Position numbers and translations under genes: made by a program
Shown: positions 2,271 through 57,350 of the stretch, in pieces
How the letters are laid out: every line of letters starts with the position of its first letter
How positions within the stretch are numbered: position 1 is the stretch's first letter
IMG/VR virus record: IMGVR_UViG_3300042934_000547
Span: 167,976-231,975 of that record
Reading direction: 5' to 3' (one strand)
Length of the DNA stretch: 64,000 nt
Notes under the pieces: model-generated
Databases searched by the model: none
Told to the model about the DNA's origin: nothing
Seen by the model: the letters and a program-made list of their open reading frames with translations, nothing else

Positions 2271-2410
2271 ACTTAACTCCTTTCTTTATATCATAATTAT
2301 TGTGCCCTGAGTTATATTTTATTTTATTGCTTTATCTGTATGTTAAAACTTACCCATGTATGCATATCTAAAGAAAAAAAATAAAGAGGGAAGTTATTCC
2401 CCCTTTTTAT

Positions 2411-3232
2411 TTAATGATTATGGTTACATCCACACGATTGTTCACCAGTATGAACATGACCGCAATTACAGTCACGAGGTTCTCTAGTCTGAATTTGTGG
2501 ATTTCTTATAATCGGACTACCTCCAATAATGTAATTAATATATGTGGTTGTAAATAACAAAGTTGGATGATCATTACCACCCACAGTCAAAGTCATTTTT
2601 GTCATAAGATCATTTTCATCAAATTCATATTGGATATGTTTAGCCCCTGTAACAGATTCTTCCAGCACTTGACCTAAATCATTATCACGATATATCATGT
2701 GCGAAAGTTCATTACCATCTTCACCGATAACTATTTCACTCTTTTTGTTTGGTGAATTTGGATAAAACTCGCCTGTTACCTTAAACCCATCAATTTCAAA
2801 TGAATATTTATCACCATCGATTTTAATATCATATAACGTTTCAATCAAAGCTTCTTTATTTTCTGAATCTTGAGAATCTACCGAATGTTTAATCATTCTT
2901 ATTGGTCTTTCTAATTCATTGAATTCAGTATCCATATAATTTAAATAAAGACTACCACTTCTAGTTGTTTCAGTAAATTTGCTTTTTGTAAGTTTGTTAT
3001 TTTCGTCATAAAAATTTTCTGTTATAGAACTCGGTTCAATTTTTCTAATTATTTTATCAGTATCTTGTAAATAACTAATTGTTTTTTGATTACCTACATA
3101 AATAGACGTTTCATCATTAATACGAACAATTCTTCCGAGTTCATCAGTAAACATCAATGCGTGAAAGCATTCTCCTTCGTTTACAACCTTTCTTGTCACT
3201 AATATCTTTTTATTTGCTAAATTTTCATTCAT
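2411..3232 (-). CDS. YD/RHS-repeat-like protein (paralog 1) with Cys/His-rich tail
   Basis: YDENNKL, DNDLGQV, YEFDENDLM repeats; N-terminus similar to 3366..4055; likely start at MNENL (3232). Confidence 0.65.
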   Translation of the reverse strand: MNENLANKKILVTRKVVNEGECFHALMFTDELGRIVRINDETSIYVGNQKTISYLQDTDKIIRKIEPSSITENFYDENNKLTKSKFTETTRSGSLYLNYMDTEFNELERPIRMIKHSVDSQDSENKEALIETLYDIKIDGDKYSFEIDGFKVTGEFYPNSPNKKSEIVIGEDGNELSHMIYRDNDLGQVLEESVTGAKHIQYEFDENDLMTKMTLTVGGNDHPTLLFTTTYINYIIGGSPIIRNPQIQTREPRDCNCGHVHTGEQSCGCNHNH

Positions 3233-3365
3233 TTTATTACCCTTTCTTTGCCTCATTTTAGGATAAGATATGAGGTCTTACACATTATTTTCTTATCCAT
3301 ATCTATAATATACATTTGAAATAAGTTATATTTACATGGGGAGTGAATATTCACTCCCATTATTT

Positions 3366-4055
3366 TTAATTAAAAATTCGGTTATAAAATGTAGTGGTGG
3401 TTTCTTCTGTATTATTATCTTTATGAGACACTTTCTTAGTTAATAATCCATTTTCGTCATATGTATATTTAGTTAACTTTCCATATTGACATGTTGAGTA
3501 CCATTGATTTAATGGATTATCAATGTAAAAATTATGTATAACAACAGTATCTGTTTTTATTACCGTTGCTTTATATTCTTTCTTACGTGAAGAATTTGGG
3601 AAATAAGTAAAGTCCAATTTTCTGCCATTTATGATAAAAGTGTATGTATCATTAACTATAGTAGCATCCATGATTGTTTTTTCCTTTTTGGGATCTATAT
3701 CACCAAAAATAGAATCAGTACTACCCTTAGTGATCTGTATTATTCTCCCTAACTCATCATATGAAAATATCCATATAAAAAGGTTTACACCATCTACGTC
3801 TTTTGTATACTCCCTACCTACTTCCAATTTACCGTTTTCATCATAGACATATTCGCCACACATTGTAGAACTTATTTTAATGATTTTGTCAGTATCATTG
3901 AAGTATTCGATATTTTCTGACGATCTCGTATACTTCTTTTCCCTCCTTACAATTCTACCGAGTCTATCGGTAAACATCAGTGAATGAAATTGTTCCTCAC
4001 CATTATTCTTTCTCTTTGTTACCAAAATTACTTTCTTTTCCAAATTTTTGTTCAT
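3366..4055 (-). CDS. YD/RHS-repeat-like protein (paralog 2)
   Basis: YVYDENGKL, FSYDELGRI, YTYDENGLL repeats. Confidence 0.72.
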   Translation of the reverse strand: MNKNLEKKVILVTKRKNNGEEQFHSLMFTDRLGRIVRREKKYTRSSENIEYFNDTDKIIKISSTMCGEYVYDENGKLEVGREYTKDVDGVNLFIWIFSYDELGRIIQITKGSTDSIFGDIDPKKEKTIMDATIVNDTYTFIINGRKLDFTYFPNSSRKKEYKATVIKTDTVVIHNFYIDNPLNQWYSTCQYGKLTKYTYDENGLLTKKVSHKDNNTEETTTTFYNRIFN

Positions 4056-4182
4056 CTTGTTTATTCTCCTTTTTAGGTTTTTAAATAAAAATCTATGTTT
4101 TTATTCATATCTATAATATATACTTGAAAAAATAACTAGAGAAAAAAGAAGGAGGATGAAATTAATCATCCTCCATTATTAT

Positions 4183-4710
4183 TTACTTTCCAGTTGAGCC
4201 AAAGCCCTTCTCACCACGAGATGATGGGGATAATTGTTTTTTAATTACCAGCTTATCAGGTTTAATTCCAGTAGATATAACTAGTTGAGCGATTCTATCA
4301 CCGATAGAAACTATATATTCACTTTCACCTAAATTGAATAATACTACCTGAATTTCTCCTCGATAAGATTCATCTATTGTTCCCGGACTATTAAGAACAA
4401 ATAAATCATGCTTACGAGCTAGTCCACTTCTACTACGAACATCGGCGTATAATTCTTCCCAAGGGTTTAATCTGATATTAATAGACGATAAATCAATCCA
4501 AGTTCCAGTTGGTATGATTCGTTTTGATTTAGGTGGAATAGTAACATTTATAGTGCTTTGTAAATCCATTCCTATAGAACCTTCATCTTCGAATTTAGGT
4601 AAGAATTTTTCATCTGTAACCTTTACATCCATTGTGATTTTTGGTATATTTGGTAGTGCTGACAGTGTACCAGTAAAACACATTTCTGAATTAACTATTA
4701 AATTATCCAT
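4183..4710 (-). CDS. dut: Trimeric dUTPase
   Basis: GMDL, RSRSGLA, NSPGTIDESYRGEI, GDRIAQL, RGEKGFGSTG (motifs 1-5). Confidence 0.97.
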   Translation of the reverse strand: MDNLIVNSEMCFTGTLSALPNIPKITMDVKVTDEKFLPKFEDEGSIGMDLQSTINVTIPPKSKRIIPTGTWIDLSSINIRLNPWEELYADVRSRSGLARKHDLFVLNSPGTIDESYRGEIQVVLFNLGESEYIVSIGDRIAQLVISTGIKPDKLVIKKQLSPSSRGEKGFGSTGK

Positions 4711-4767
4711 TATAAACTCCTATTTATTATATTTGATTTTATCTTATAGTTGATCATAAAGATTTTT

Positions 4768-5226: not shown

Positions 5227-5299
5227 AATATATTACCTCCAATATTGGTTAATTAGAATAGTGTCATAAAAAAGAAAGAGAGGGAATCCCCTCCTTTCA

Positions 5300-6921: not shown

Positions 6922-7039
6922 TCGAATTCCCCCTGTTATTAAGATTATTAATTCTATCCTATATTAGATTAGAATCAATTTCATAAATATAATATATACT
7001 TATAAGTGTTTTTATGGAATTGAAATGATTAAGTGATTT

Positions 7040-7442: not shown

Positions 7443-7516
7443 ATTCGTAAATATTTTTTATAAATTTTATAGTCCTTCAACAATACTATAAATAATCCTT
7501 AGGAGGATATAAATAA

Positions 7517-8131
7517 ATGAATATAAAAAATAAGATTAGGTTATTCTTTCATAAATATAATTTAGATAATATATTTCTATTCTTTAATAATGATATAGAT
7601 TTAGAAACTAAAACGACCATTCTGAGTGAGGAAGAAATATTAAGCAATCCTTTAGCTAGTTTATGTCAGCACCCATTTTATTCTATTATAGATATAAGCT
7701 TTGTTAATCAAAAAATAGTAATCAGTCTAGAGTCAATTATAACTCTAACCATATTACATGATTGTATTCAGAATATTTATAATAGAACGTCTGACTATAT
7801 ATTCACATTTGACATCACACGGTCTTATAAGATAGATAAGCTCGTAATCGATGTGGAAATACAATTCAGTACGACTCAGCAGGCTTATAAGTATTTACTC
7901 CTTTTACTGACTGACCTTAACCTAGAACTTATAGAAAGTGTAACTGTAGAACCTAAAAATATTTACGAGCATGATGATCTACTAAAATATTTCAATTCAT
8001 ATCAAGTAAATTATGAATCATATATACGATATTTGGATTCTAGTAAAACTAAACCTCAAATCAAATATATTATTGATGTACTTCATAATCATAATGATAT
8101 GATTAAAAATATTCGTGATTTAATACATTAG
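7517..8131 (+). CDS. Hypothetical protein
   Basis: 204-aa ORF, AGGAGG RBS, AACA-N6-TA at 7479-7490. Confidence 0.65.
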   Translation: MNIKNKIRLFFHKYNLDNIFLFFNNDIDLETKTTILSEEEILSNPLASLCQHPFYSIIDISFVNQKIVISLESIITLTILHDCIQNIYNRTSDYIFTFDITRSYKIDKLVIDVEIQFSTTQQAYKYLLLLLTDLNLELIESVTVEPKNIYEHDDLLKYFNSYQVNYESYIRYLDSSKTKPQIKYIIDVLHNHNDMIKNIRDLIH

Positions 8132-9361: not shown

Positions 9362-9535
9362 GAAAAAAAAATATCGGGTAGGAAATCAATCCTACCCATT
9401 AGGCATGTGTAAAAGTAATTGATTTATATGAATTAAAAAAGGAACGTTGTTGATGGAAAACAAATTTTAGGAGTTATACATAACAAATTGTCTTCACATG
9501 CCTATTTTATTTAACTGAAATTTTCTTATTCAATT
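9362..9535 (-). ncRNA. Candidate ~170-nt small RNA
   Basis: AACA-N6-TA at 9535-9546(-); closing stem 9400-9409/9495-9504; terminator hairpin 9376-9397 plus T-tract; no ORF. Confidence 0.5.
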
Positions 9536-9555
9536 ACCTTATTGTTATTACCCTA

Positions 9556-9669
9556 TTAATTATTATTACGTTGAATTGGTATAATATTATGAGTAAATTT
9601 GAATAGTAATTGTTCAGACTCTTCCACCATCAATGCCTCTAGTATGAATTTCTTTTCATTAATTGTCAT
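9556..9669 (-). CDS. 37-aa hypothetical protein (not in ORF track)
   Basis: MTINEKKFILEALMVEESEQLLFKFTHNIIPIQRNNN*, directly after the ATP-cone gene, AAGGA RBS. Confidence 0.45.
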   Translation of the reverse strand: MTINEKKFILEALMVEESEQLLFKFTHNIIPIQRNNN

Positions 9670-10521: not shown

Positions 10522-10676
10522 ATTGTAAGTCTCCCTTCTAATGCCTATTAATTAAATTATCTTTATGTTTGTTTTTTCGTTAAATATTCTACAGTTACAT
10601 AAATCAATATCTCCGTGAAATTTATTATTTTATACCATTGCAACATTATAATAGTTGTGGAAGACTAAAGGAGAAT

Positions 10677-11489: not shown

Positions 11490-11560
11490 TAAAATATATT
11501 ATAAATATATATTATAACAATGAATTAAACAAATTTAAAATTTTAGGAGGAACAACAAAG

Positions 11561-12668: not shown

Positions 12669-12766
12669 CAATTAATGGTGGAACCTGTAATCGGGTTCCA
12701 TCATTTTTTTTTGTATTATGACAATATTCGCATCAAGATAAGAATGTAAAAATTAACTTTTTTGAA

Positions 12767-12787
12767 TATATATTATAGATATGAATA
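12767..12787 (+). promoter_or_regulatory. Early-type promoter motif TATATATTATA(GATATGAATA), representative copy
   Basis: Also at 769-779(-), 3304-3312(-), 4112-4122(-), 6988-6998(-), 9239-9249(-), 11506-11516(+), 28967-28977(+), 53320-53330(-), 63647-63657(+), each upstream of a co-oriented gene. Confidence 0.75.
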
Positions 12788-13015: not shown

Positions 13016-13093
13016 ATATGAATAATAGAACGATAAAATAATATAGCGGGAAATAAGAATGCTATATTATTTTTTATCTAAAAGGAGATAAAG

Positions 13094-21257: not shown

Positions 21258-21383
21258 AATATATTTCCTCCTTAAAATGTGATTAAAATAATTTTATAAA
21301 TTAATTGATGACCACATCTATTAATTCATATCATTCTAATAATATGTCATTATAGATTTGCATCAATCTGCTTTATAATGGTG

Positions 21384-23679: not shown

Positions 23680-23765
23680 TTATGTGAATTCCTCCTTATC
23701 TTTTTAATTATTTTGATGTTTAAGCCAAAAAATAAAGCTCTATCATTAATAAATACGTATATATG

Positions 23766-24005: not shown

Positions 24006-24231
24006 ATAAAAGTCCTCCTTAAATTAGAAAGTTCCATCCTTATTAAAATGTAATATTGAATCTTTATTTAGATTGCAACGACAGTGTTGGGTCAGATGAA
24101 ATTTCCATTTAAACGGATTATTATATGATAAAGCTTTCAGATATATGATATATATCTGTAATAAATATTACTGTGGAATTATATTTCGAAACATCCTTAT
24201 AATATATAAAGTAGATAGGAGGTGGAATTCA

Positions 24232-25403: not shown

Positions 25404-27989
25404 ATGAGTGAAAACACAAATCTTGTTGGTGGTGATATTTACGAGATTGAGAAATATATTGACAATATAAAGAAAAACCATATAGATGAAGATGAAAATA
25501 CATTAAAAATTGGTATATTCGGATTTATGAGTGACTTATTTACTAGAGAAATAAATCAATCAATAATGATGTCATCTGAAGGTCTCAATCAGATATTCCC
25601 AACAAGAGCAACACAAGAAAAATATATCTTAACCCATGCTACTGAAGCAAATGTCCAAGATATAGAAAGCGTACCTAGTATCATGAAAATAATGTTGGGT
25701 ATGACTAAAGAAGATATGGAACGTAATATGGTGCAGAATGTTTTATTACTTGATTGTGATATTCCTATTTACGTTGATAAATATGAATTCCATTTTGATT
25801 ACGATATAAGAATAGAGAAGACTGCTGTCAATAATAAGGATATATATACAGCTAGATATATAATCAATGAAACAAACCCTGTATCAGATATAAAAAATCC
25901 TTATATATTACCTCCAATACAGTTCACACTATCAGGAGATACATTCTTGTTTTTCGAGATTAGTGTAAGACAGATATTTAAAACAAAGGACTATAATAAG
26001 ATAATAACAAGTGATAAGATTGAAAATAAATCTTATCGATTTGAATTTACTAACCAATTATCGAAATTCCATTTAAAGATAACAAATCTTAATGGAACTC
26101 AAAAAATACTTTATCCATTGTATAGGGGAACTCCGATAATTGATAATACTAAACTGTATTGTTATTACGACTATTATGATGAAACTACAGTAAGGGTTTA
26201 CTTCATTGATGACCAGTATATTCCAGAAATTAATGATGAAATATGTACAATAATCCAGACATCTCTTGGTGCAGATGGTAACTTTGAATACAGTCAAGAT
26301 TTCCAAGTTATGGCAAAATCTCCAAATAGAGAATATAACGATTTAAGATTCCTAATACAAATCAGAGAACATGCTGTATTTGGGGCTGATAAAAAGAGTA
26401 TTGAAGAACTCAAAACTATTACTCCAAAAGAGAGACTCGGAAGAAACGTAATAACTTGTGCACAAGATTTAGAGAATTTCTTTAACGGTTTATATGATAA
26501 TACTAATAGGATAAAGTTCTATAAGAAAATTCATAATCATATAGATACTCGTTATTTCGCTTATATACTTATGAAAGATAATAGCGAAAATATAATTCCA
26601 ACTAATACAATCGATTTTGAAGTTACTGATGCTGATTTTGACCTCATTAGCGATAATTCATACATCATTAAACCCGGAAAGAAATTTAGATTAAATAAAA
26701 ATCAATCAGTGGCTAAGATGATAGATCCATTAGAACCTAATCCGGTTGACCTGTTTTTCGATTACACTAATATATTTATGATATATATGAGTAAAAGACC
26801 GACAGTGATACTATATTATCTAAACACTTTTAACTTTAATAAACTATTAAATTTCGATTTCATCAACACAGATGCAGATCTTCAATTTATTGGTAATAAA
26901 GCTAACTGGGTTAGAAATATGGGTGATGATGAATATCGTTTAAAAATCGATTTTGCTCAGAATATCAAGGAAAATATGGGAGTTGTAACGAAGGATGAAA
27001 CCGGAGCAATAACCAGTTCAACAGTTAGCATATATGCTGTTCTAAAAGATGAAACAGGTGCAGTAGTTAGATATAAGAAATTTGAAATAAATGGATTCAA
27101 TGAACAGAAGTTCGAACTTAATACTTTACTCACTCTTCAAACGTCTAATAAGATTGATGACAGTGGTAAGTTAGAAATTCTAGATATGTGTTCTATGAGG
27201 AGTATTGATGTAACCCCTATCAATATTTCACCAATTGCTGCTTCAGTGACATTCTATATCTATAGGAAGGAAGATACTAAGTATTATACAAATCCTATGG
27301 ACAGTCAATTACCATTAGACCCAACTGACGTTCTATGTAATATCTATAGTATAAGTGGAGGACTTGATTTTCTGCTTGACTATACGGGTATAATGAATTC
27401 TACTCTAAGTATTATAAGAGAGGAAGGATTACCTGATAGATATGTATTTAAATCATCTCCTATGATTAAATATAATTATGGTACAAGTAAGGAAAATATA
27501 GATTATATTATTAATCGTATCAGAGAAAAACGTATATATCTATTGTCGGCTTTAAGTCAGTTAGAACATTCCATAGGGATAGACTTTAAATTCTTTAATA
27601 CTTATGGACCAAGTAAATCATTCAATATTGGTAGAGGATATGAAAAAATCGATAGAGTTAATATTACTCTTAAATTTGCTGTCAAATGCTATGTTGGAGC
27701 TGACAATAATATCAGAGAATTGGTAATAGGTGAAATCAAGTCTTATATAGAAAATATTAATAATATTAGCGACCTATCTATATCAAGACTAACAAAGATA
27801 ATATTAGAGAAGTTTACAGATATTCAGGATTTTGAATTTAAGGGAATAAATAACTATACTACAGATTATCAAAACATCACGAATGTTGACATAAATAACT
27901 ATCGTTTAACCCATACCCCAGAATTCCTTAATATCAATAATAGCTCTGATATAGGATATTCCCCAGACATCATTGTGGATATCGTTTAA
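25404..27989 (+). CDS. Baseplate wedge protein (T4 gp6/P2 gpJ-like)
   Basis: TSLGADGN, FGADKKSIEELK, RNVITCAQDLENFF resemble gp6/gpJ motifs (G.D.E...R...R.VT..DY). Confidence 0.65.
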   Translation: MSENTNLVGGDIYEIEKYIDNIKKNHIDEDENTLKIGIFGFMSDLFTREINQSIMMSSEGLNQIFPTRATQEKYILTHATEANVQDIESVPSIMKIMLGMTKEDMERNMVQNVLLLDCDIPIYVDKYEFHFDYDIRIEKTAVNNKDIYTARYIINETNPVSDIKNPYILPPIQFTLSGDTFLFFEISVRQIFKTKDYNKIITSDKIENKSYRFEFTNQLSKFHLKITNLNGTQKILYPLYRGTPIIDNTKLYCYYDYYDETTVRVYFIDDQYIPEINDEICTIIQTSLGADGNFEYSQDFQVMAKSPNREYNDLRFLIQIREHAVFGADKKSIEELKTITPKERLGRNVITCAQDLENFFNGLYDNTNRIKFYKKIHNHIDTRYFAYILMKDNSENIIPTNTIDFEVTDADFDLISDNSYIIKPGKKFRLNKNQSVAKMIDPLEPNPVDLFFDYTNIFMIYMSKRPTVILYYLNTFNFNKLLNFDFINTDADLQFIGNKANWVRNMGDDEYRLKIDFAQNIKENMGVVTKDETGAITSSTVSIYAVLKDETGAVVRYKKFEINGFNEQKFELNTLLTLQTSNKIDDSGKLEILDMCSMRSIDVTPINISPIAASVTFYIYRKEDTKYYTNPMDSQLPLDPTDVLCNIYSISGGLDFLLDYTGIMNSTLSIIREEGLPDRYVFKSSPMIKYNYGTSKENIDYIINRIREKRIYLLSALSQLEHSIGIDFKFFNTYGPSKSFNIGRGYEKIDRVNITLKFAVKCYVGADNNIRELVIGEIKSYIENINNISDLSISRLTKIILEKFTDIQDFEFKGINNYTTDYQNITNVDINNYRLTHTPEFLNINNSSDIGYSPDIIVDIV

Positions 27990-28024
27990 ACAATTAAATA
28001 ATACAATTAATGGAGGTATATCAA

Positions 28025-45570: not shown

Positions 45571-45664
45571 ATAATCATCCTCCCAAAATCATATAATACT
45601 ATGTTTGAGAACGTGTATATTTATAATAGGGAACAATATAATAATAAAAATTAGGAGGAATAAT

Positions 45665-48600
45665 ATGTATTTTACTAATGAAATGAAACCAATGGTTTTG
45701 TATAAAAATAAAGTAAGATTACCTCGTGGGGAAAAAAGACTAGATAAGGGTAGTATTGTATTCTTATTAACACCGAATCTGGATAGTGTAATAAGAACTA
45801 TAAATAATCCCTTGTTTGATACCCGTTATTATGAGCATTTATTTATAGAAAGAGATGTGAGCTATTTCATTGGTAATAGAGAAGTTGTCAATGAAGACGG
45901 TGATATAACTGAGATATCTATGAGTGATAAATTCTTGTTAGAAGATCATGCTATACTTGAAACTGATAATCAAATCTTTTTAAGTCCATTAACTGAAGTT
46001 GATGGAGAGTACATGACTGTTCTTAAGAGAATGCTTTATAACGATAGGATGAAAACCCCAAAGACAATAGTAGCTAAGTATAATGAATACAATGAAAAAG
46101 CTGAAAAGAAGTTAAAGTGGAATCTCACACTTAACTTGTATCGTAAAGCTAACCTATTTTATGATATAAGCTACTATACCGAAACATTCTTTAAGAACCT
46201 TAAATTCGAAAAGGATAAAGCACTTGGTATCTATTTAGAATTTCTACAGAATTATTTAAATAGCTTTGATATGAAAAAATATGGCTATACAAAAAAGACC
46301 CTGATAATCCCATTAGAGGATTGGTATAATGTGGATAAGACATTCAATTATATAAATGCTATCAATCCAATTACATTATTCTTTAGGTACTTTAGGAAAG
46401 ACTTGGCTCTATTACAAAAAGTATTCACCGGATTTGATATGATATTTACTATTGGGGATAAATATTCGTTTAGAATCAATATTGACGAGTTCGATTATAA
46501 TAAAAATTATCCTACATTCGTTAGATATCTAAATGTGACAGCAAAGCAGGATGAAGTGAATAATTCTGAATTTGACATCGATGAAAATAATAAAGATTCT
46601 AGGGAAATCGTTAAAACCGATGTAAAAGAAGAAATAAGTAAAAATACAAAAATTAAAATGAAATCAGTCACTGGCGATGATGCTACTCCAAGTGCAGAAG
46701 AACTTGATAATGTTATAGATATCATCGTTGACGAAAAGATGAAAGAAACAGAAGAAGAGAATAATACTGAAGAAGTCTACGAAGAAATTGATAAAAATCC
46801 TGAAATAGCAAAACTGATTGCATATTCTAAAGACGAAGAGAAATTGTCTAAGTCGACAGCTAAACGAGAAATCAGAATAAATAAACTTAGGGATAGCTAT
46901 CAAGACGTCAGTATTAATAATAAAAAGATATCCAATCTTAAACCGTCAGTAGAAGCAGCGATACTAAAACCAGCTAAAGAAGTTAAGGTTGATGCTCTTG
47001 ACGATACATGGGATAATCTTACATATATGAACTTCGAAAAGACCTATAATAAGGAATTGAAGGATTATCATTTTGGTAAAATTTTGGAACATTTTGGAAC
47101 CAATGTAAAATATCCTATAATGGTAACTGATATTAAGGTAGAAAATAAGTCTACAACTGAGGATAAATATGATGAATATTCGATTGAAACAGAAGATAGT
47201 TTTGGTAAACGTGCTACATTAAAGATACACTTACCTAGATTTATTAATGATAGATCAATATTCATAAAAGGTAATGAAAAGAAATTACAAAAACAATTAG
47301 TATTATTCCCAGTAGCTAAAACAGAGACTAACTGTGTACAGATAGTATCTAACTACAACAAATTATTTATCGAGTTATTTGGAAGTACATCGAATGTAAT
47401 TGAAGATAGAATATTAAAGACTTTAACTAAACTTCAGGAAAAAGGCTCAAAAACTGTCAAAATTACAACTGGTAATGCTACAGAACTCAATAAATATTAT
47501 GTACTACCAAATGATTACGTAGAAATGAGTGGTAAGATATATCGTATAGAAGCAGATGACGTTACTTACTATTTTGACCAGTCTGAAATACGTGATATCA
47601 TTCTAAAGAAAAAACCTAATGAGAAGTTTGATACAGGAATACCTTTTGCTATCAATAATAAGACTAATATGGTATATGTATATGATGGAAATATTCCAGA
47701 TATTACATTTTCATATATGCTTAATGAGCACTTAAAACAAAATAAGGAATATAGTGAGGCATACGATGGTACTTCTATAGCTAAACGTTATTCATATAGT
47801 AGGGTTAGAATACTTAGTGCCAGAATTCCACTAATTGTCTTTTTAGCATTTAATGAGGGATTATTAACAGTATTGGATAAATCAAATGTCCAATATGAAA
47901 TACTCGACAAAAATGATAGAGATGACAGGGATTTATTTGACTACATTAAATTTAGCGATCGAGTTATAAAGTATAAAATAACTAATAACTCTAGCATTTT
48001 GATGAATGGATTAAAAGTTTGTAATACTCAAGAATATACATTAGCTGAAATGAATCAGAGCCAAAGTTATATAGATATCATTGGACAGTTTGGTTCTAAG
48101 ACATTAGCTGACCCTATTGAATCATTCCATGAGTTAGAGTTAGACCCAATGACTCTCGATGTTATTCATGATCTCAAACTACCTGATAAATTTACTGAGT
48201 TATTATTATATGCTAATGATATGCTATCAGATAATAGCTATGAAGATCATAATATCATATATAATAACAGATTAAGAAGCAATGAGATTATCAACGGTTT
48301 ACTATATAAATCTCTGTGTGAATCATACCAAGAATACAAGATGGGCATAAGAAATGGAAGAAGGGATAATAAAATATCCATAAAACCAACATGTGTTATT
48401 GATAAATTACTAACTCAAAATACTATGCTTGATGCATCAAAATCTACGGCATTATTGGAGATGGAAGAATCTGAAACTGCTAGTAAAAAGGGTTTTGGCG
48501 GAATGAACTTAGAAAAAGGATATAAGCTTAACAAAAGACAATATGATGAATCAATGTTAAACGTTCTATCTATATCATCCGTAGCAGGACCTACTATCGG

Positions 48601-49951
48601 GATTAACCGTAGTTTAACCATGAATGCTCAGATAACTGATGCTCATGGATATATCAGACCAACTGGTGTTAATGAAATGACTGCTGCTAATACATTTTGT
48701 ATAACAGAAGCATTAAATCCATTTGTTGCGACATCAGATGCTGGTGAAAGAATTGCTATGACGTATTCTCAAGGTAAGCATACCGTTAGAACACAGCGTT
48801 CATCACCATTGCTTGTTACATATGGAGCCGATGAAGCTATGCCATATATGATATCAGATACATTTGCATATAAGGCACCTTTCGATGGTAAGATAAAGGA
48901 AATAACTGATGATTACATTGCATTAGAATCCAATGATAATGAAACTCACTATGTTGCTACAGAAACAATAAGTAAAAACGTCAATACCGGTACATTCAAT
49001 GCAATTAAGTTAAAGAGTGATTTAAAAGTAGGACAGAAATTTAAAGAGGGTTCTATAATTGCACACGACCCATTATCATTTAGTGGAGAAGTCGGTCAAA
49101 CAGATAACTTAGCATATAATGTCGGATGTATGGCTAAAGTAGGTGTAGTTGCATATCCTTTTGGATTCGAAGACTCATGTAAAATTACTAAGCAATTAGC
49201 TAGAAATATGATGTCTCAAGTTACTACTAAAAAAGAAATTAATCTGGGTAAAAATGCTAACGTGTTCAATTTGATTAACAAGGGTGATGATGTTCAACAA
49301 GGTCAATCTTTAATGGTAATACAAAACTCATTCGATGATGAGGATTTAAATATTGTCTTAAAGAATATGATTACAGATGAAGACGGAGACTCAGAAGTTA
49401 TTGATGATTTAGGAAGAATTCCAGTTAAATCTAAATATACAGGTCGTATCGAAGATATTAAAATCTTTAGAACTGTTGAATTGAGCGAATTATCTCCCAC
49501 ACTAAGAAAGTTATGCGAGAAATATGAAGCTCCTACGAAAAAATTAAGGAATCAAATGAAAAAAGAAAAGAATAATCAGGTTTATTCAGATGTGGTTGAA
49601 CAACCTGACTATAAACTTGAACCAACTGGACAGTTAAAAGGTATCCCAAATGGTGAAGGTGTTCAGATAAGAATATCTATAACCTATAACGATATCATGG
49701 CATGGGGTGACAAATTAACATTTACTGTTGCTCTTAAAGGTACAGTAGGCGATACTTATGATGAAGACAAAGTTCCGTATTCATCATATAGGAAGGATGA
49801 GCACATAGATACCCTGCTTAACTCAACTTCTGTAAATAAACGTATGACTCCATCAGTATTTAAAATCGGTGGTAGTAATAAATTTGCCATCGAATTAGGT
49901 AGACAAGTTAAAGACATGCTTGGAATACCATACGATGTAAATTTCAGATAA
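45665..49951 (+). CDS. Phage multisubunit RNA polymerase beta-like subunit (probably virion RNAP)
   Basis: FIKGNEKKLQKQL, KKGFGGMN, AGPTIGINRSL, NPFVATSDAGERIAM, GFEDS, GDKL...KG, LLNSTSVNKRM are collinear with RpoB motifs; late-type promoter; start after AGGAGG. Confidence 0.88.
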   Translation: MYFTNEMKPMVLYKNKVRLPRGEKRLDKGSIVFLLTPNLDSVIRTINNPLFDTRYYEHLFIERDVSYFIGNREVVNEDGDITEISMSDKFLLEDHAILETDNQIFLSPLTEVDGEYMTVLKRMLYNDRMKTPKTIVAKYNEYNEKAEKKLKWNLTLNLYRKANLFYDISYYTETFFKNLKFEKDKALGIYLEFLQNYLNSFDMKKYGYTKKTLIIPLEDWYNVDKTFNYINAINPITLFFRYFRKDLALLQKVFTGFDMIFTIGDKYSFRINIDEFDYNKNYPTFVRYLNVTAKQDEVNNSEFDIDENNKDSREIVKTDVKEEISKNTKIKMKSVTGDDATPSAEELDNVIDIIVDEKMKETEEENNTEEVYEEIDKNPEIAKLIAYSKDEEKLSKSTAKREIRINKLRDSYQDVSINNKKISNLKPSVEAAILKPAKEVKVDALDDTWDNLTYMNFEKTYNKELKDYHFGKILEHFGTNVKYPIMVTDIKVENKSTTEDKYDEYSIETEDSFGKRATLKIHLPRFINDRSIFIKGNEKKLQKQLVLFPVAKTETNCVQIVSNYNKLFIELFGSTSNVIEDRILKTLTKLQEKGSKTVKITTGNATELNKYYVLPNDYVEMSGKIYRIEADDVTYYFDQSEIRDIILKKKPNEKFDTGIPFAINNKTNMVYVYDGNIPDITFSYMLNEHLKQNKEYSEAYDGTSIAKRYSYSRVRILSARIPLIVFLAFNEGLLTVLDKSNVQYEILDKNDRDDRDLFDYIKFSDRVIKYKITNNSSILMNGLKVCNTQEYTLAEMNQSQSYIDIIGQFGSKTLADPIESFHELELDPMTLDVIHDLKLPDKFTELLLYANDMLSDNSYEDHNIIYNNRLRSNEIINGLLYKSLCESYQEYKMGIRNGRRDNKISIKPTCVIDKLLTQNTMLDASKSTALLEMEESETASKKGFGGMNLEKGYKLNKRQYDESMLNVLSISSVAGPTIGINRSLTMNAQITDAHGYIRPTGVNEMTAANTFCITEALNPFVATSDAGERIAMTYSQGKHTVRTQRSSPLLVTYGADEAMPYMISDTFAYKAPFDGKIKEITDDYIALESNDNETHYVATETISKNVNTGTFNAIKLKSDLKVGQKFKEGSIIAHDPLSFSGEVGQTDNLAYNVGCMAKVGVVAYPFGFEDSCKITKQLARNMMSQVTTKKEINLGKNANVFNLINKGDDVQQGQSLMVIQNSFDDEDLNIVLKNMITDEDGDSEVIDDLGRIPVKSKYTGRIEDIKIFRTVELSELSPTLRKLCEKYEAPTKKLRNQMKKEKNNQVYSDVVEQPDYKLEPTGQLKGIPNGEGVQIRISITYNDIMAWGDKLTFTVALKGTVGDTYDEDKVPYSSYRKDEHIDTLLNSTSVNKRMTPSVFKIGGSNKFAIELGRQVKDMLGIPYDVNFR

Positions 49952-49993: not shown

Positions 49994-50026
49994 AATTTTT
50001 ATTTAAATTTCCTATAACAATATAAT

Positions 50027-50525
50027 AGATATTGTTTGATTATAAATGCTTAAACCGGTTAGCTTTTAATCGATAAGACAGTATCCATATAGTATTTAGA
50101 TATGCCGGCAGCCCCTTATAATGGACCATTAGTAAACTAAAATGATCATTGATGGTATTGTGGGCTTATGCTGGCAAAATCTTACTTCCAATTATGCACT
50201 TCGAGTTAAAGTAGCATGGTAATATAGTGTCCCCCGGGTAAGTCGTCCCCTACCCTTCTTGATACCGTGCTACTAAGTGTATAATGTAACATTTGGATAA
50301 TATTTAGGATTTGGTTACCGTTTAACCCATTCTAAATTTTATTATATATTTTTTCTTCTTTTACTACACCTCATTTTGTTAGGTGCATTGGTTTTCTCCT
50401 TTCTCTATTTGTATGACAAGCACTTAAAATAGCGTAATAAGAATAGCTACTTATTACGCTATATTGGGTGTGAGTATTAATAATTTGAAAAAAAAATAAT
50501 GAGGTAGGATTAATTTCCTACCTCT
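50027..50525 (+). ncRNA. Candidate large structured ncRNA (~450-500 nt)
   Basis: ORF-free, locally GC-enriched; AACA-N6-TA at 50016-50027; multiple stems with recurrent G-U pairs on the + strand; hairpin 50501-50524 plus T-rich tract. Confidence 0.65.
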
Positions 50526-50530
50526 TCTTT

Positions 50531-50908
50531 TTATTCTTTAATTTCGTACGTCACCATAATCTGCGTAAACGTTAATTTTCCTGATGATGGTATAAGTCTA
50601 TTTGAATCAGATTTAATCCCAATCATTTCATCTATATCACGTAAAAATTCAAATATATTTTGAATGTCTTTAATAATATCAATGTAAATGATTACTGATT
50701 TACCACGAATTACAGCCATAGATATTCTATAAGACGGTAATATAAATGGTTTAATGCGTATATCTTCATTGTCGAATTTGAATACTATATCATCTCGATG
50801 TGGAAATACTTCTCCATATGAAATAATCTTTTTAACATCTTTTGTCTCAACTAAATGGAGTTGTTTAAATTTTTCTAGATAGTAGTTCTTATTCATTGTC
50901 ATCTTCAT
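50531..50908 (-). CDS. Hypothetical protein
   Basis: N-terminus MNKNYYLEK and layout resemble the adjacent 50889..51623 protein. Confidence 0.55.
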   Translation of the reverse strand: MKMTMNKNYYLEKFKQLHLVETKDVKKIISYGEVFPHRDDIVFKFDNEDIRIKPFILPSYRISMAVIRGKSVIIYIDIIKDIQNIFEFLRDIDEMIGIKSDSNRLIPSSGKLTFTQIMVTYEIKE

Positions 50909-53221: not shown

Positions 53222-53372
53222 TTCCTTTCTTCTCCACGACTATAATAAGTCAATAAGTATTTTGTGGTTATCATTTCTTAATTGAAATAATTATTTAGAT
53301 TTATTTTACCTATCAAATATATAATATATATCTGAAATTATTAACAATTACATCTAATTAAGGAGGTGATTC

Positions 53373-54201: not shown

Positions 54202-54213
54202 AACAATATAATA
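54202..54213 (+). promoter_or_regulatory. Late-type promoter motif AACA-N6-TA, representative copy
   Basis: Also at 2333(-), 7431(-), 7479(+), 9535(-), 10558(-), 10642(+), 23709(-), 24190(+), 27989(+), 43546(-), 45594(-), 45632(+), 50016(+), 57315(+). Confidence 0.75.
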
Positions 54214-54246: not shown

Positions 54247-56007
54247 ATGCAATATGGTACTAGACAAAGAGTGAATAATGATATAGCTGGTATGAGCTAT
54301 AAAAAAGATAAGCTTTATAAATATGCTGAGCAAACTAATGAGTTGAGAACAGCAATTAAGGAAGAAACTGGGTTAGATATATTTACTACTCCGGGAGGTA
54401 TATCAAATGATAGATATGCCGTTGCGAGAAACCAGTTAAAGGATTTCTTCGTACAAGAATCATACGATCCTGATTTGGTAACTACATTGGACGAACAATC
54501 AGCAGTTATGGATGACATGGGTGCTTTGTTCGAAAACATGATGGATGCTATGGAAACAACTGTAGGTTCTCCTATTCAGACTAACCTTAACGAGTCTGTT
54601 GCGTTGAACACTTTGAATCCAATCATCGCTATGTCTCCAATGATATACAAAGATATATTGATTAACAATATATTCCAAAGTGCTATCGATACTGCTGTTG
54701 CTGTAAGTCCTATCGTACCAATAAGACATGAGCACAGATATTTAGTTTCGGTTGACGGAACTAAGAAGATTGATATTTCTAAGCAGCAACACATGATAAA
54801 ATCATTTATGGATGAAACTGCTCCATTTAAAGAAATAGTAATCACTCTTCCAGAAAACGGTTCAGTTGACATAATTGCTGCATTAAACGGCAATAATTCT
54901 GATTCATTATCAACAGCTTCTTATATTTCTAAGATTGTTATTGATAAAACTGCTGCACCTGTTGAACCTGCAACTGAAATTGAAACAGTAGAAAGACTCT
55001 GTGATTTCAGATTATTACCACAAGGTTTCAATACTACATCTGCTCAAAGATATTTGATCCAAGATGTATTGTTACCTTACTTAGATGCTCAAGGTAATCC
55101 AGTGGCAGACACAATGACTGTTACTATGAACAATAACAAATTAACAGCTATGTCTTCAATGGGTAAAATAAGATCTATAACTTTCAAAGCAAGACTTGAT
55201 ACTTCAACAGCAATGTTAAAGACTTGTACAACTGCTTGGGAGCATGAAAATACACAAATCGGAATCGATGATGGTATGCCTCTTGCTACTACTGTTAACC
55301 CAAGTGAATTGAAAGATATTGCAGCTTTATTCAATATTGATCAGTTGACTAAAGTTATGAGTATATTCAGAGACACAATGGCTAACTACAAAGACAGCCA
55401 CATTTATGAATACCTAGTTGATTCTTATAATAGAATGCCTGATGATTTCGGTGGAAAATTCTCTGGTAAATTCGACTTTGCTGATATAGCAGGATATCAT
55501 GTACAGAATCCAGAATCTTGGAGACATGAAGCATTTATGCCTATATTGGACTCTTATATTTCAGATGCTTTACAACATTTAAGAGACCCTAATATATCAG
55601 TAACAATATTAGGTAGACCTGACCTTATCAGAAAGATCGAGCCTTCTAAATACGAATATCAGTCTCCAAAGAATATCGGTGCTATTCCTCTTGAATTCAA
55701 CAGAACTGTTACTACTAACCACGGCAGACAGTACAACTTCAACAGCTCAATGAAGATTAACTATGATACAGCAAACAGAAACAAATTCAGAGTTGTATTT
55801 AATCCTACATCATCTGAACGTTTCATCTACAGACTGTACAACTACCAGTTAGTAATTTCTAATGAAATCAAAGCTCAGGAGAACTTAGCATTGCCATCAG
55901 TATATGCATTCGAAAGATTCAAAGTTACTGAATGGCAACCAGTTCAAGGTGAAATTCTTGCAGTTAATCCTTCAGGATTCACTAAACCTGAATACGCTAA
56001 CCTGTAA
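54247..56007 (+). CDS. Probable major capsid protein precursor
   Basis: 586 aa; perfect RBS; late-type promoter 54202-54213; high-expression codon bias (ttc/aac/tac); propeptide ending ~NLNES; own terminator. Confidence 0.65.
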   Translation: MQYGTRQRVNNDIAGMSYKKDKLYKYAEQTNELRTAIKEETGLDIFTTPGGISNDRYAVARNQLKDFFVQESYDPDLVTTLDEQSAVMDDMGALFENMMDAMETTVGSPIQTNLNESVALNTLNPIIAMSPMIYKDILINNIFQSAIDTAVAVSPIVPIRHEHRYLVSVDGTKKIDISKQQHMIKSFMDETAPFKEIVITLPENGSVDIIAALNGNNSDSLSTASYISKIVIDKTAAPVEPATEIETVERLCDFRLLPQGFNTTSAQRYLIQDVLLPYLDAQGNPVADTMTVTMNNNKLTAMSSMGKIRSITFKARLDTSTAMLKTCTTAWEHENTQIGIDDGMPLATTVNPSELKDIAALFNIDQLTKVMSIFRDTMANYKDSHIYEYLVDSYNRMPDDFGGKFSGKFDFADIAGYHVQNPESWRHEAFMPILDSYISDALQHLRDPNISVTILGRPDLIRKIEPSKYEYQSPKNIGAIPLEFNRTVTTNHGRQYNFNSSMKINYDTANRNKFRVVFNPTSSERFIYRLYNYQLVISNEIKAQENLALPSVYAFERFKVTEWQPVQGEILAVNPSGFTKPEYANL

Positions 56008-56038
56008 TCCTTATTCCTTTCATATAATATATATTAAA

Positions 56039-56070
56039 AGAGCCTACGGCATGTCCCGTAGGCTTCTTTT
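56039..56070 (+). terminator. Terminator after the capsid gene
   Basis: agcctacgg-catgtc-ccgtaggct followed by a T-tract. Confidence 0.8.
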
Positions 56071-56102
56071 TATTTAAAGAAAAATTTAAACAGGAGGTAT
56101 TT

Positions 56103-57269
56103 ATGAGTAATAAAACTGATTATAACTTTGGTCCTTTAGTTACATATTGTGATAACTTACTCAGAGATTATTCTAACACACCGAGAAGAAATTCGGCACT
56201 GAAAGATATCAAAGACGAATTGAATAAATTCTTCAAGGATAATAAATGCGTGGATATCATCTATACAGAAAACGATAGAATATTCTTTGGTATGTACATG
56301 TTCCCCATAAATGAACGTAATAAAACATACATGATCGAAATCGATTCAAAGTTATTAAATCCTATGATGCAATTGAATGGCAGGGAATTAGCTGCTGTAT
56401 TTTTACATGAAGTTGGTCATTGTGTGGCAAATGAAGTTGCTTACACTAAACTCGATTCAGCAGCTAATGTGTATATTGCTAAAGAAGGTATTATAATCGA
56501 TAAAGACATAGAAGAAAATTCTAAAAAAGTTAAATATATCACTATGGTTAAATCAATCAGAAATATTGCCTCCATATTTGTTCGTAATGATATGGAAGAA
56601 ATGTTTGCTGATGATTTTGTTAGAAGTACTGGATTTGGTTTAGACCTAGAGAGGGCATTTACTAAATTTAAACGCTATTGTTATGAAATACCTGAGAAAA
56701 GAAGATTATCTACCACCTTCTGGTATCTAAAGATGGTTGGAAGTTTTAATAATCGTTCAGGTTACGCTAAATCACAACTTAAAGATGGTAAAGCTGTTGA
56801 GCCATCCAAATATCTAAGAGATATATATGGAGAGGCTATAAAAGAAATAGTATCAATGGAATTGAAGAAGGGTAAATTATCTAGATACAACGAAGCTGTG
56901 GCTTATAAATTCGATAAGAGCATTGAAGCCTTAGAGGAAGGTACAAGAGACGTTGTTAAATCTATCAGATATAATATGACCAGAGATATACAAGATAAGA
57001 TTTATGAGCTGGAGATTCGTTCTAAGCATTTAGATAATGAATATGAAGCTATCAATCTTATCAAAGAACTCAATGTCTATATAGATGCTATGGAACTCAC
57101 GATGTTAAAAAATAAGGCAGATAAAAGAGAAAATGAAATGCTTTCCATGAATCTCAAGAAAGCCATGGCTTTACGTGATAAGGTAGCTAATATGCCTACA
57201 TTTAAACGTAAGGTTTATGGATTGTATATCCAATATCCAGAAGATGAATCCTTTGACGTTGCCTATTAA
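56103..57269 (+). CDS. HEXXH zinc-metallopeptidase-like protein
   Basis: ELAAVFLHEVGH ... EEMFADDF (zincin/M48-like). Confidence 0.7.
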   Translation: MSNKTDYNFGPLVTYCDNLLRDYSNTPRRNSALKDIKDELNKFFKDNKCVDIIYTENDRIFFGMYMFPINERNKTYMIEIDSKLLNPMMQLNGRELAAVFLHEVGHCVANEVAYTKLDSAANVYIAKEGIIIDKDIEENSKKVKYITMVKSIRNIASIFVRNDMEEMFADDFVRSTGFGLDLERAFTKFKRYCYEIPEKRRLSTTFWYLKMVGSFNNRSGYAKSQLKDGKAVEPSKYLRDIYGEAIKEIVSMELKKGKLSRYNEAVAYKFDKSIEALEEGTRDVVKSIRYNMTRDIQDKIYELEIRSKHLDNEYEAINLIKELNVYIDAMELTMLKNKADKRENEMLSMNLKKAMALRDKVANMPTFKRKVYGLYIQYPEDESFDVAY

Positions 57270-57350
57270 TTTCTAGTATAGGGGTTTACCCCTATACTAT
57301 TTTATTTTGTCTAAAACACTTCATTAGTGATTAATTGGAGGTATTAGAAT

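What the first reader, a model, noticed from the sequence alone, without database searches (positions are those of the whole stretch)
2333..57326. AR9-type AACA-N6-TA late promoters in a phage that encodes dUTPase and dTMP kinase
Seen: about 15 correctly oriented intergenic AACA-N6-TA sites before structural genes, RNAP and the ncRNA candidates, plus GACA and AACT variants (21337-21348, ~5254-5265, 57972-57983). Established: the AR9 non-virion RNAP recognises this consensus and needs deoxyuridine in the template strand of its uracil-DNA genome. An intact dUTPase and a tmk gene argue for thymine DNA here. Inference: the same promoter code is read in a U-independent way, a natural comparison for the evolution of U-dependence.
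Basis: partly seen in the sequence, partly recalled or inferred. Interest (0 to 1): 0.6.

Follow-up and report, generated by a model that had tools for sequence, protein, structure and literature searches.

The report
AR9-type late promoters, thymine-DNA jumbo phage
A soil jumbo phage carries the late-promoter code of the uracil-DNA phage AR9 and a diverged copy of its promoter-reading subunit, yet its genes point to ordinary thymine DNA, so it is a natural test case for how uracil dependence arose.

Summary
The bare AACA-N6-TA word is not enriched in the window (49 found, 79.8 expected). It is in fact depleted inside genes. In the correct orientation before genes it is strongly over-represented and depends on the spacing: 26 sense against 6 antisense, 8.8 expected, and no excess with N5 or N7. 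It lies a median 29 nt before start codons. It precedes the major capsid, portal, sheath, virion-protein and virion-RNAP genes here, in three uncultivated relatives and in AR9.

The window is the last 64 kb of a 232-kb phage. This phage belongs to an uncultivated sister clade of the dU phages AR9/PBS1, S6, LPJP1 and phiR1-37. It shares AR9's early promoter and has a split non-virion RNAP plus a remote gp226 homologue.

The genome encodes an intact dUTPase, a ThyX and a dTMP kinase, and it has no dCMP deaminase. The four dU relatives show the opposite pattern. The gp226 residues that exclude thymine in AR9 (V206, I207, Y210) are replaced.

The consensus here is (A/g)AC(A/T)-N6-TAA. The change from AR9 is not a simple V206G-like substitution. 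DNA chemistry and transcription start sites remain untested.

The parts
54202..54213 (+). Late promoter AACAATATAATA; predicted +1 at 54213, 34 nt before the major head gene
   Evidence: PWM 14.4 bits. The downstream gene matches phrog_20655, major head protein. Orthologous MCP genes of G002, G005 and G009 carry AAC[AT]-N6-TA upstream.
45632..45643 (+). Late promoter AACAATATAATA before the virion-RNAP beta gene
   Evidence: 14.7 bits. It is followed by AGGAGG at 45654 and ATG at 45666, so the listed TTG start at 45605 is too early. The same motif stands before the orthologues in G002, G005, G009 and AR9.
23709..23720 (-). Late promoter AACATCAAAATA; +1 at 23709, 30 nt before the virion structural gene 22384-23679
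   Evidence: Best site in the window, 17.4 bits. The gene matches phrog_23804 and AR9 g214. The motif is kept in all four compared genomes.
7479..7490 (+). Late promoter AACAATACTATA before gene 7517-8131
   Evidence: 11.9 bits, 27 nt from the start codon.
10558..10569 (-). Late promoter AACATAAAGATA before gene 9673-10521
   Evidence: 10.4 bits, 37 nt from the start codon.
27989..28000 (+). Late promoter AACAATTAAATA before gene 28010/28036-28900
   Evidence: 10.0 bits. GGAGG and then ATG follow about 36 nt downstream, so the true start is probably near 28036.
50016..50027 (+). Late promoter AACAATATAATA in front of about 0.5 kb without an ORF (ncRNA candidate)
   Evidence: 10.0 bits. It lies between the terminator of the vRNAP beta gene and a terminator near 50500-50535. 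No Rfam or tRNA match.
9535..9546 (-). Late promoter AACAATAAGGTA in front of about 170 nt without an ORF, ending at a terminator (ncRNA candidate); a second site lies at 9561-9572
   Evidence: 12.9 and 11.0 bits. A hairpin plus T-run lies near 9395-9362.
24041..24052 (-). Late-type site TACATTTTAATA before gene 23766-24005
   Evidence: 11.5 bits, 36 nt from the start codon. It departs from the consensus at -11.
13029..13040 (+). Late-type site AACGATAAAATA before gene 13094-13279
   Evidence: 10.8 bits, 54 nt from the start codon.
4740..4751 (-). Late-type site AACTATAAGATA before the dUTPase gene
   Evidence: 9.0 bits, 30 nt from the start codon.
57972..57983 (+).
   Evidence: 8.8 bits; EM posterior 0.81.
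57315..57326 (+). Marginal site AACACTTCATTA before tmk
   Evidence: 6.8 bits; EM posterior 0.45; 25 nt from the start codon.
5254..5265 (-).
   Evidence: -1.1 bits. The position (28 nt from the start codon, after a T-run) is right, but the sequence support is poor.
21337..21348 (-).
   Evidence: 0.3 bits and 80 nt from the start codon.
4183..4710 (-). Trimeric dUTPase gene
   Evidence: TIGR00576 at 132.6 bits against a cut-off of 102.55. All five Dut motifs are intact in the alignment to solved dUTPases. No Dut in PBS1, S6, phiR1-37 or LPJP1.
57351..57962 (+). dTMP kinase gene
   Evidence: TIGR00041 at 115.1 bits against a cut-off of 83.25. P-loop GIDGCGKT and DRH/DRY are present. Absent from the four dU phages.
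54247..56007 (+). Major head protein gene (late)
   Evidence: phrog_20655, E 3.9e-12.
45666..49951 (+). Virion RNAP beta-like subunit gene (late)
   Evidence: tblastn to the vRNAP beta genes of LPJP1, phiR1-37, S6 and PBS1 at about 30% identity and to AR9 g189.
4113..4125 (-). Early-type promoter core (AAGTATATATTATA-N4-TGA). Other copies: 770-782 (-), 3305-3317 (-), 6989-7001 (-), 11503-11515 (+), 12766-12777 (+), 28964-28976 (+), 53321-53333 (-), 63644-63656 (+)
   Evidence: 33 genome-wide sites by EM. Nearly identical to the 33 early promoters annotated in AR9.

Best explanation
The sites are late promoters of the phage's own non-virion RNA polymerase. This polymerase has two beta pieces and two beta' pieces plus a sigma-like fifth subunit that is a remote homologue of AR9 gp226.

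The working consensus on the non-template strand is 5'-(A/g)AC(A/T)-N6-TAA-3'. By analogy with AR9, transcription should start at the A after the T, about 29 nt before the start codon. These promoters drive structural and virion genes (capsid, portal, sheath, virion proteins, virion RNAP) and a few ORF-free transcripts.

A second, very strong motif (AAgTATATATTATA-N4-TGA) marks early genes read by the injected virion RNAP, as in AR9.

The phage belongs to an uncultivated sister clade of the dU-DNA phages. That clade makes dTMP (ThyX or ThyA), and this genome also removes dUTP (Dut) and phosphorylates dTMP (Tmk). Its DNA most likely contains thymine.

The helix of gp226 that forms the U-only pocket in AR9 is rebuilt here, so the same promoter word would be read without deoxyuridine.

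What is shown: the motif statistics, its position and orientation, its conservation before orthologous genes, the gene content, the homology of the subunit and the residue replacements.

What is inferred: the transcription start sites, thymine in the DNA, which strand is read, and U-independence.
For: Motif statistics:
- The motif is specific for orientation and spacing.
- The PWM scan puts 16 of the 20 best sites sense-upstream, at a median of 29 nt from the start codon.
- There is no -35-like conservation.
- The motif is depleted inside genes on both strands.

Comparison with AR9 and relatives:
- AR9, run as a positive control through the same pipeline, gives 56 sense and 10 antisense sites. 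Relatives G002, G009 and G005 give 48/8, 49/8 and 41/7.
- The motif is kept before the orthologous MCP, portal, sheath, g214-like and vRNAP-beta genes while the flanks are not conserved.
- The early motif equals the early promoters annotated in AR9.
- Early-type promoters precede the orthologues of nvRNAP beta'C, beta C and beta'N, DNA polymerase and ligase. Late-type promoters precede protease, terminase, sheath, portal and virion proteins.

The sigma-like subunit:
- The gp226 homologue lies at genome 38-1351. hmmsearch gives E 8.8e-18 and hhalign gives 99.8%, E 7.5e-28.
- The best PDB fold hits are 7S01_A and 7UM0_A, the AR9 holoenzyme.
- It is syntenic with the primase gene, as in AR9.
- V206, I207 and Y210 become D, N and T here, and are variable in the clade.

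Nucleotide metabolism and phylogeny:
- Dut, ThyX and Tmk are present and the deaminase is absent here. The reverse holds in four dU phages.
- Every near-complete clade member has ThyA or ThyX.
- In the nvRNAP beta-C tree the dU clade and this clade are each monophyletic (100/99) and are sisters against phiKZ-like phages (100/100).
- The AR9 biochemistry comes from PMC9209446 and PMC7598289.
Against: - No RNA data exist for this genome, so no transcription start site is mapped.
- DNA chemistry cannot be read from sequence.
- The ThyX is diverged: RHR reads RKR and Y91 is N.
- The position equivalent to V206 is not a small residue. It is D here and L, T, P or V in relatives, so there is no simple steric explanation as there is for the V206G mutant.
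- The model of the subunit is poor over residues 164-258, so the pocket geometry could not be examined.
- The beta-N alignment around R363/K375 has low confidence.
- The 3' half of the motif (TATAAT-like in some sites) resembles a host -10 element.
- The PWM was trained on upstream regions, so the PWM counts are partly circular. The regex, dyad and shuffle tests are not.
Confidence: 0.68

Rival explanations
1. The promoters are AR9-type, but the DNA nevertheless contains dU or another thymine replacement. Dut, ThyX and Tmk would then serve something else, such as timed pool control, host takeover or a modified-base pathway.
For: The ThyX is atypical, with RKR in place of RHR and Y91N. All characterised phages with a close gp226 are dU phages. 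Clade member G008 carries a deaminase and only a partial ThyA-like gene.
Against: An active dUTPase destroys the precursor that a dU phage needs, and all five Dut motifs are intact. Four of four dU relatives lack Dut, Tmk and any thymidylate synthase, and all four have a dCMP deaminase, which this genome lacks. There are no homologues of AR9 Ugi, the deoxyribonucleotidase or the deaminase. There is no ThyA-family hydroxymethylase that could make hmU. The U-pocket residues are not conserved.
Confidence: 0.12
2. The same polymerase and the same word are used, but recognition has moved to the non-template strand. A(-11)A(-10)C(-9) would be read as bases, in the manner of a sigma70 -10 element. 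The methyl groups of template T would then not matter.
For: AR9 gp226 already has a non-template groove for AACA. The residues that hold the template bases in AR9 (V206, I207, Y210) are all replaced, yet C(-9) stays the most conserved base. There is no V-to-small change.
Against: There is no direct evidence. The non-template-groove residues S245/Y246 are also changed in this genome, to H and L. This rival is a sub-variant of the main explanation, not an alternative to it.
Confidence: 0.15
3. The motif is read by the host RNA polymerase. The TA(A)T part would be a -10 hexamer, perhaps with a phage-encoded factor.
For: Several sites contain TATAAT, for example AACAATATAATA at 45632, 50016 and 54202.
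Against: The invariant A(-10) and C(-9) at fixed N6 spacing are not part of any sigma-A element. There is no -35 or TG conservation, with at most 0.3 bits from -46 to -12. The word and spacing are identical to those of the experimentally defined AR9 nvRNAP promoter and occur before the same orthologous genes. A complete phage nvRNAP is encoded.
Confidence: 0.04
4. The pattern is a chance product of AT-rich intergenic DNA.
For: The bare word is not enriched in the window. Mononucleotide shuffles of intergenic DNA give only z about 2.3.
Against: The strand, spacing and position specificity, the shuffle tests and the conservation before orthologous genes all argue against chance.
Confidence: 0.01

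Closest known systems
AR9/PBS1 late promoters read by the non-virion RNAP with gp226 (template 3'-UUGU-N6-AU-5')
   Same: The same word and N6 spacing. The same position before the orthologous late genes. The same early-promoter consensus. The same split beta/beta' polymerase plus a gp226-family subunit next to the primase gene.
   Different: Gene content points to thymine DNA. -11 is relaxed (A 0.78, with G tolerated), -8 is A or T, and +2 is A. The gp226 motif D-x-V-I-W-x-[YF]-L reads N-P-D-N-W-K-T-Q here. Only 45 of 238 proteins have AR9 homologues, at 24-43% identity.
AR9 gp226 V206G mutant, engineered to accept T at -10
   Same: It relaxes the U requirement through the same helix (2.1bis) that is altered here.
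   Different: The natural clade does not carry a small residue at that position. It has D, L, T, P or V, and the neighbouring I207 and Y210 are changed too, so the solution must be different.
phiKZ non-virion RNAP with gp68 (thymine DNA, late promoter TATG at the start site)
   Same: Thymine DNA. A five-subunit nvRNAP with a gp68/gp226-family subunit, which is the third-best fold hit (8QUE_B). A tubulin-family gene is present.
   Different: phiKZ late promoters have no -10-like AACA element. The beta-C tree puts phiKZ-like phages outside the AR9 plus this-clade group. No chimallin was detected by single-sequence search, which is uninformative.
Bacterial sigma70 -10 element
   Same: A short AT-rich element about 10 nt upstream of the start site, read through a sigma-like subunit.
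   Different: There is an invariant C at -9 and no -35. In AR9 the template strand is the one read.

Membership tests
AR9-type nvRNAP late promoter | Non-template 5'-AACA-N6-TA-3' with fixed spacing | tested here: met
   26 sense and 6 antisense, with no excess at N5 or N7. The PWM gives A.78 A.98 C.97 [A.64/T.28]-N6-T.94 A.93 A.85.
AR9-type nvRNAP late promoter | Stands before late or structural genes | tested here: met
   It precedes the MCP, portal, sheath, terminase, protease, virion-protein and vRNAP beta genes.
AR9-type nvRNAP late promoter | Transcription starts at the A of TA | not testable with these tools
   No RNA run holds this genome. Only the distance to start codons, median 29 nt, is consistent.
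AR9-type nvRNAP late promoter | The cognate polymerase is encoded: split beta/beta' plus a gp226-family subunit | tested here: met
   Orthologues of g105, g089, g270 and g154 are present. The gp226 homologue is supported by profile, profile-profile and fold searches.
AR9-type nvRNAP late promoter | The U-excluding pocket residues of gp226 are conserved (V206 invariant in dU phages) | tested here: not met
   V206, I207 and Y210 are D, N and T here. The V206 position is L, T, P, V or D across the clade.
AR9-type nvRNAP late promoter | [quoted passage not shown] | not testable with these tools
   This needs biochemistry. Gene content argues that no dU is available.
dU-genome jumbo phages (PBS1/AR9, S6, phiR1-37, LPJP1) | dCMP deaminase present; no thymidylate synthase, Dut or Tmk | tested here: not met
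   This genome has Dut, ThyX and Tmk and no PF00383 deaminase. The four dU phages show the reverse.
dU-genome jumbo phages (PBS1/AR9, S6, phiR1-37, LPJP1) | Falls inside the dU clade in an RNAP phylogeny | tested here: not met
   It falls in a sister clade, with each clade supported at 100/99.
dU-genome jumbo phages (PBS1/AR9, S6, phiR1-37, LPJP1) | Uracil-DNA glycosylase inhibitor and dTMP-removing nucleotidase | tested here: inconclusive
   tblastn finds no homologue of AR9 g104 or g151. These small proteins evolve fast, so absence is weak evidence.
Trimeric dUTPase | Five conserved motifs, including the catalytic Asp and the C-terminal arm | tested here: met
   The alignment to solved dUTPases shows GMDL, RSRSG, GTIDxxYRGE, GDRIAQ and RGxxGFGSTG. 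TIGR00576 scores above its cut-off.
Flavin-dependent thymidylate synthase ThyX | RHRxxSxxxxS motif and dUMP-binding arginines | tested here: inconclusive
   PF02511 scores 97.8 bits. The equivalents of R78, R80, S83, S88, R147, R174 and H53 are kept, but H79 is K and Y91 is N.
Chimalliviridae (phiKZ-like nucleus-forming phages) | Chimallin shell protein; PhuZ tubulin | tested here: inconclusive
   A tubulin-family gene is present. A single-sequence search with the presumed chimallin homologue of phage KTN4 (a phiKZvirus), picked by its position next to the gp055-like nvRNAP gene, found nothing, which is uninformative. The tree places the phage outside phiKZ-like phages.

The most novel reading that the evidence does not exclude
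The AAC(A)-N6-TA late-promoter code and the early-promoter code predate the switch from thymine to uracil. On this reading the common ancestor of this clade and the AR9-like phages read the code on thymine DNA, as the phiKZ-like outgroup does with its own promoters. The strict dU requirement of AR9 (the V-I-W-x-[YF]-L pocket) would be a later lock, added when that lineage adopted dU-DNA and lost its tubulin gene. The thymine clade would solve the discrimination between self and host DNA in another way, perhaps by compartmentalisation with its PhuZ-like tubulin.
Probability: 0.35. Interest if true: 0.8.

Novelty: new variant of a known kind. Interest (0 to 1): 0.62.

Why it matters
The dU requirement of AR9 nvRNAP has been explained by one pocket in gp226, and it has been proposed to be the way the phage avoids transcribing host DNA. 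So far the only thymine-tolerant form is an engineered mutant.

This finding offers a natural clade that appears to use the same promoter word on thymine DNA with a rebuilt pocket. The clade comprises at least eight uncultivated genomes of 220-250 kb, and no isolate was found in the phage collection searched.

Three questions become directly testable. Which residues create U-dependence? Was the promoter code or the base change first? How does a polymerase with a seven-base consensus avoid host DNA when it cannot use uracil as a mark? The late promoters of this clade can also be predicted from sequence alone, which a 2020 review says fails for jumbo phages that encode their own RNAPs.

Tried and rejected
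- Unseeded and loosely seeded EM on upstream regions drifted to the ribosome-binding site, to reverse-complemented ribosome-binding sites, to terminator hairpins, or to the early promoter (and 76 for this genome). I therefore relied on regex, dyad and shuffle tests, plus a seeded EM on sequences with the early motif masked.
- Single-sequence searches for the gp226 homologue failed. These were AR9 gp226 against this genome, this protein against phage records and against PDB sequences. Only profiles and fold comparison found it.
- I rejected the idea that thymine tolerance comes from a small residue at V206. The position holds D, L, T, P or V.
- The structure model is too poor over residues 164-258 to inspect the pocket.
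- The beta-N R363/K375 comparison has low confidence.
- Transcription-start mapping was not possible. Only DNA runs kept as contigs hold the stretch.
- No UDG gene was found in any compared genome, which is uninformative.
- The chimallin search found nothing, which is uninformative.
- Rfam and tRNA scans of the window and of the ORF-free stretch found nothing. nhmmer found no homologue of the two ncRNA candidates in relatives.
- A megablast of the vRNAP gene against phage records found nothing.

Full report
WHAT THE WINDOW IS

The window is the last 64 kb of a single 231,975-bp virus contig with direct terminal repeats. The contig has 30.8% G+C and its best holder is a soil metagenome.

The 1,448-aa ORF at 45605-49951 is a virion-RNAP beta-like protein. 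It is about 30% identical to those of Listeria phage LPJP1, Yersinia phage phiR1-37, Staphylococcus phage S6 and Bacillus phage PBS1. Only 45 of 238 predicted proteins have tblastn matches in AR9, at 24-43% identity. The phage is therefore a distant relative of the AR9 group.

THE OBSERVATION

The bare word AACA-N6-TA occurs 49 times in the window, against 79.8 +/- 9.9 in dinucleotide shuffles. It is not enriched overall.

The deficit comes from the genes. Against codon-shuffled genes, the word is depleted on the sense strand (95 against 142 +/- 11) and more so on the antisense strand (52 against 106 +/- 9). AR9 and three relatives show the same pattern. This is what selection against spurious internal promoters would produce.

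In front of genes the picture reverses:
- In co-directional intergenic regions there are 19 sense and 4 antisense sites. N5 spacing gives 4/4 and N7 gives 3/2.
- In the -75..-6 windows there are 26 sense and 6 antisense sites, against 8.8 +/- 2.7 in shuffles. AAC[AT]-N6-TAA gives 32 against 6.9 +/- 2.6.
- A blind scan of all 3mer-Nk-2mer dyads ranks AAC-N7-TA and ACA-N6-TA at the top, together with dyads from the ribosome-binding site.
- A PWM from a seeded EM on upstream regions with the early motif masked reads A.78 A.98 C.97 [A.64/T.28]-N6-T.94 A.93 A.85.
- At >= 13 bits, 16 sites are sense-upstream and 4 are coding, although only 6.5% of the genome is intergenic. Nothing is conserved between -46 and -12.
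- The predicted +1 A lies a median 29 nt before the start codon.

Twelve window sites reach >= 9 bits. The AACT variant at 57972-57983 is credible. The GACA sites at 5254-5265 and 21337-21348 are weak, although GAC is enriched genome-wide.

WHAT THE SITES ARE

According to the literature, the AR9 non-virion RNAP recognises template 3'-U(-11)UGU-N6-AU(+1)-5', that is non-template AACA-N6-TA. It needs dU at -11 and -10. V206 of gp226 clashes with the thymine methyl group, and the V206G mutant accepts T. That valine is invariant in the gp226 homologues of dU phages (PMC9209446; PMC7598289).

My pipeline recovers this promoter in AR9 (56 sense, 10 antisense) and in three uncultivated relatives of the present phage (48/8, 49/8, 41/7).

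The motif stands before the major capsid gene (54202-54213; the gene matches phrog_20655). It also stands before the virion structural gene 22384-23679, and before the virion-RNAP beta gene, whose true start is ATG 45666. Outside the window it precedes the portal, sheath, terminase and prohead protease genes.

Before the orthologous capsid, portal, sheath, g214-like and vRNAP-beta genes of the relatives the same word recurs, and it recurs in AR9 for the four of these genes that have an AR9 orthologue (no AR9 match was found for the capsid gene). The flanks share nothing.

A second, very strong motif (AAgTATATATTATA-N4-TGA) has 33 copies. It is nearly identical to the 33 early promoters annotated in AR9. 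It precedes the orthologues of the non-virion RNAP subunits, DNA polymerase and ligase. Some genes carry both motifs, for example 11503-11527. [quoted passage not shown]

THE POLYMERASE

Orthologues of AR9 g105, g089, g270 and g154 are present.

AR9 gp226 itself finds nothing in this genome. A profile of four gp226 homologues hits the first gene of the genome (38-1351, 437 aa) at E 8.8e-18. That gene lies next to the primase orthologue, as g226 lies next to g225 in AR9.

IMG/VR holds 14 relatives of this protein at 32-42% identity. The profile of this family aligns to the dU-phage family with 99.8% probability, E 7.5e-28. A structure model (pLDDT 63.6, poor over residues 164-258) has as its best PDB matches the AR9 holoenzyme chains 7S01_A and 7UM0_A, followed by phiKZ gp68.

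In the 2.1bis helix the dU phages read D-x-V-I-W-x-[YF]-L. This genome reads N-P-D-N-W-K-T-Q, and its clade reads x-[LTPVD]-[LIN]-W-x-x-Q. The tryptophan is kept. The residues that hold -10U (V206, I207) and stack on -9G (Y210) are not.

In beta-N, R363 is K or R and K375 is D or S, but that alignment is weak.

THYMINE OR URACIL

The dUTPase (4183-4710) passes the equivalog cut-offs and has all five motifs. The dTMP kinase (57351-57962) likewise passes. Outside the window, at genome 26115-26963, lies a diverged ThyX (PF02511, 97.8 bits). Its substrate-binding arginines are kept, but RHR reads RKR. There is no ThyA and no dCMP deaminase.

PBS1, S6, phiR1-37 and LPJP1 have no Dut, Tmk, ThyA or ThyX, and all four have a deaminase. 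LPJP1's dU status rests on polymerase-sensitivity tests (PMC8460666).

AR9's Ugi, deoxyribonucleotidase and deaminase have no homologues here.

All near-complete members of the new clade carry ThyA or ThyX. G008 is an exception of sorts, with a partial ThyA-like gene plus a deaminase.

This is the strongest evidence that sequence alone can give for thymine DNA. It is still an inference.

PHYLOGENY

In a tree of the non-virion RNAP beta-C subunit, the four dU phages form one clade (100/99). The four thymidylate-synthase phages form another (100/99). The two are sisters against Moabite, RP31 and a phiKZvirus (100/100).

With thymine-DNA outgroups, the simplest reading is that the shared promoter codes are older than the switch to uracil. 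This rests on one protein and on outgroup rooting.

MECHANISM, AND WHAT REMAINS OPEN

Most likely, the five-subunit polymerase initiates at the A of TA(A) after recognising (A/g)AC(A/T) ten bases upstream, on thymine DNA.

How the methyl groups at -11 and -10 are accommodated is unknown. There is no V-to-small change. Either the pocket is rebuilt, or recognition has shifted to the non-template strand.

The relaxed -11, the A-or-T at -8 and the strong A at +2 show that the reading differs in detail from AR9.

Without uracil as a mark for its own DNA, the phage needs another way to ignore host copies of a seven-base word. The clade, unlike the dU phages, encodes a tubulin-family protein, which hints at compartmentalisation. 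No chimallin was detected, but that search is uninformative.

NOVELTY

I found no paper describing thymine-type relatives of AR9 that use this promoter. No isolate in the phage collection falls in the clade. It is a new variant of a known kind of system.

Noticed in passing
window 50016-50540 (+): A late-type promoter (predicted +1 at 50027) is followed by about 0.5 kb with no ORF. The stretch is richer in G+C, folds strongly (MFE -144 kcal/mol) and ends at a terminator. It is an ncRNA candidate with no Rfam match and no homologue in relatives.
   Followed up: partly
window 9362-9572 (-): Two late-type promoters (predicted +1 at 9561 and 9535) precede about 170 nt with no ORF, containing a long stem and an intrinsic terminator. 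This is a second ncRNA candidate. A 38-codon ORF lies just upstream.
   Followed up: partly
window 56023-56034 (-): An early-type promoter core (TAATATATATTATA) just downstream of the capsid gene points antisense into it. It could give an early antisense transcript of the major head gene.
   Followed up: no
genome 118321-119430 (-), outside the window: A tubulin/FtsZ-family (PhuZ-like) gene lies behind an early promoter. The family is present in G002, G005, G009 and G012 but absent from PBS1, S6, phiR1-37 and LPJP1. It therefore tracks the thymidylate-synthase clade.
   Followed up: partly
whole genome; also AR9, G002, G005, G009: The late-promoter word is depleted inside coding regions on both strands relative to codon-shuffled genes, and most strongly antisense. 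This fits selection against internal promoters.
   Followed up: yes
window 45605-45666: The listed TTG start of the virion-RNAP beta ORF is probably wrong. A promoter, AGGAGG and ATG at 45666 define the real start. Likewise gene 28010-28900 probably starts near 28036.
   Followed up: yes
window 32314-43584 (-): A giant 3,756-aa ORF whose only AR9 match is a glucosaminidase-like segment (g025). It is probably a tape-measure or virion-associated lysin fusion.
   Followed up: no
window 58029-59402 and 60857-62818 (+): A run of small genes after tmk. It comprises a WDGH-domain protein, a weak Acb2/Tad1-hairpin match (a possible anti-CBASS/Thoeris sponge, below cut-off) and a Phage_VG64 family protein. 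A GroEL-like chaperonin, as in AR9 g228, follows at 60857-62818.
   Followed up: no
L015 (LPJP1 record, 216553-217827): The gp226 homologue of LPJP1 is interrupted by an in-frame TAA in the deposited sequence. This could be a split gene or a sequencing error after amplification.
   Followed up: no
G008 (IMGVR_UViG_3300033463_000006): This is the odd member of the clade. It has a dCMP-deaminase family gene, only a partial ThyA-like match (61.9 bits), a weak Tmk and no tubulin. It may use a different base chemistry.
   Followed up: no
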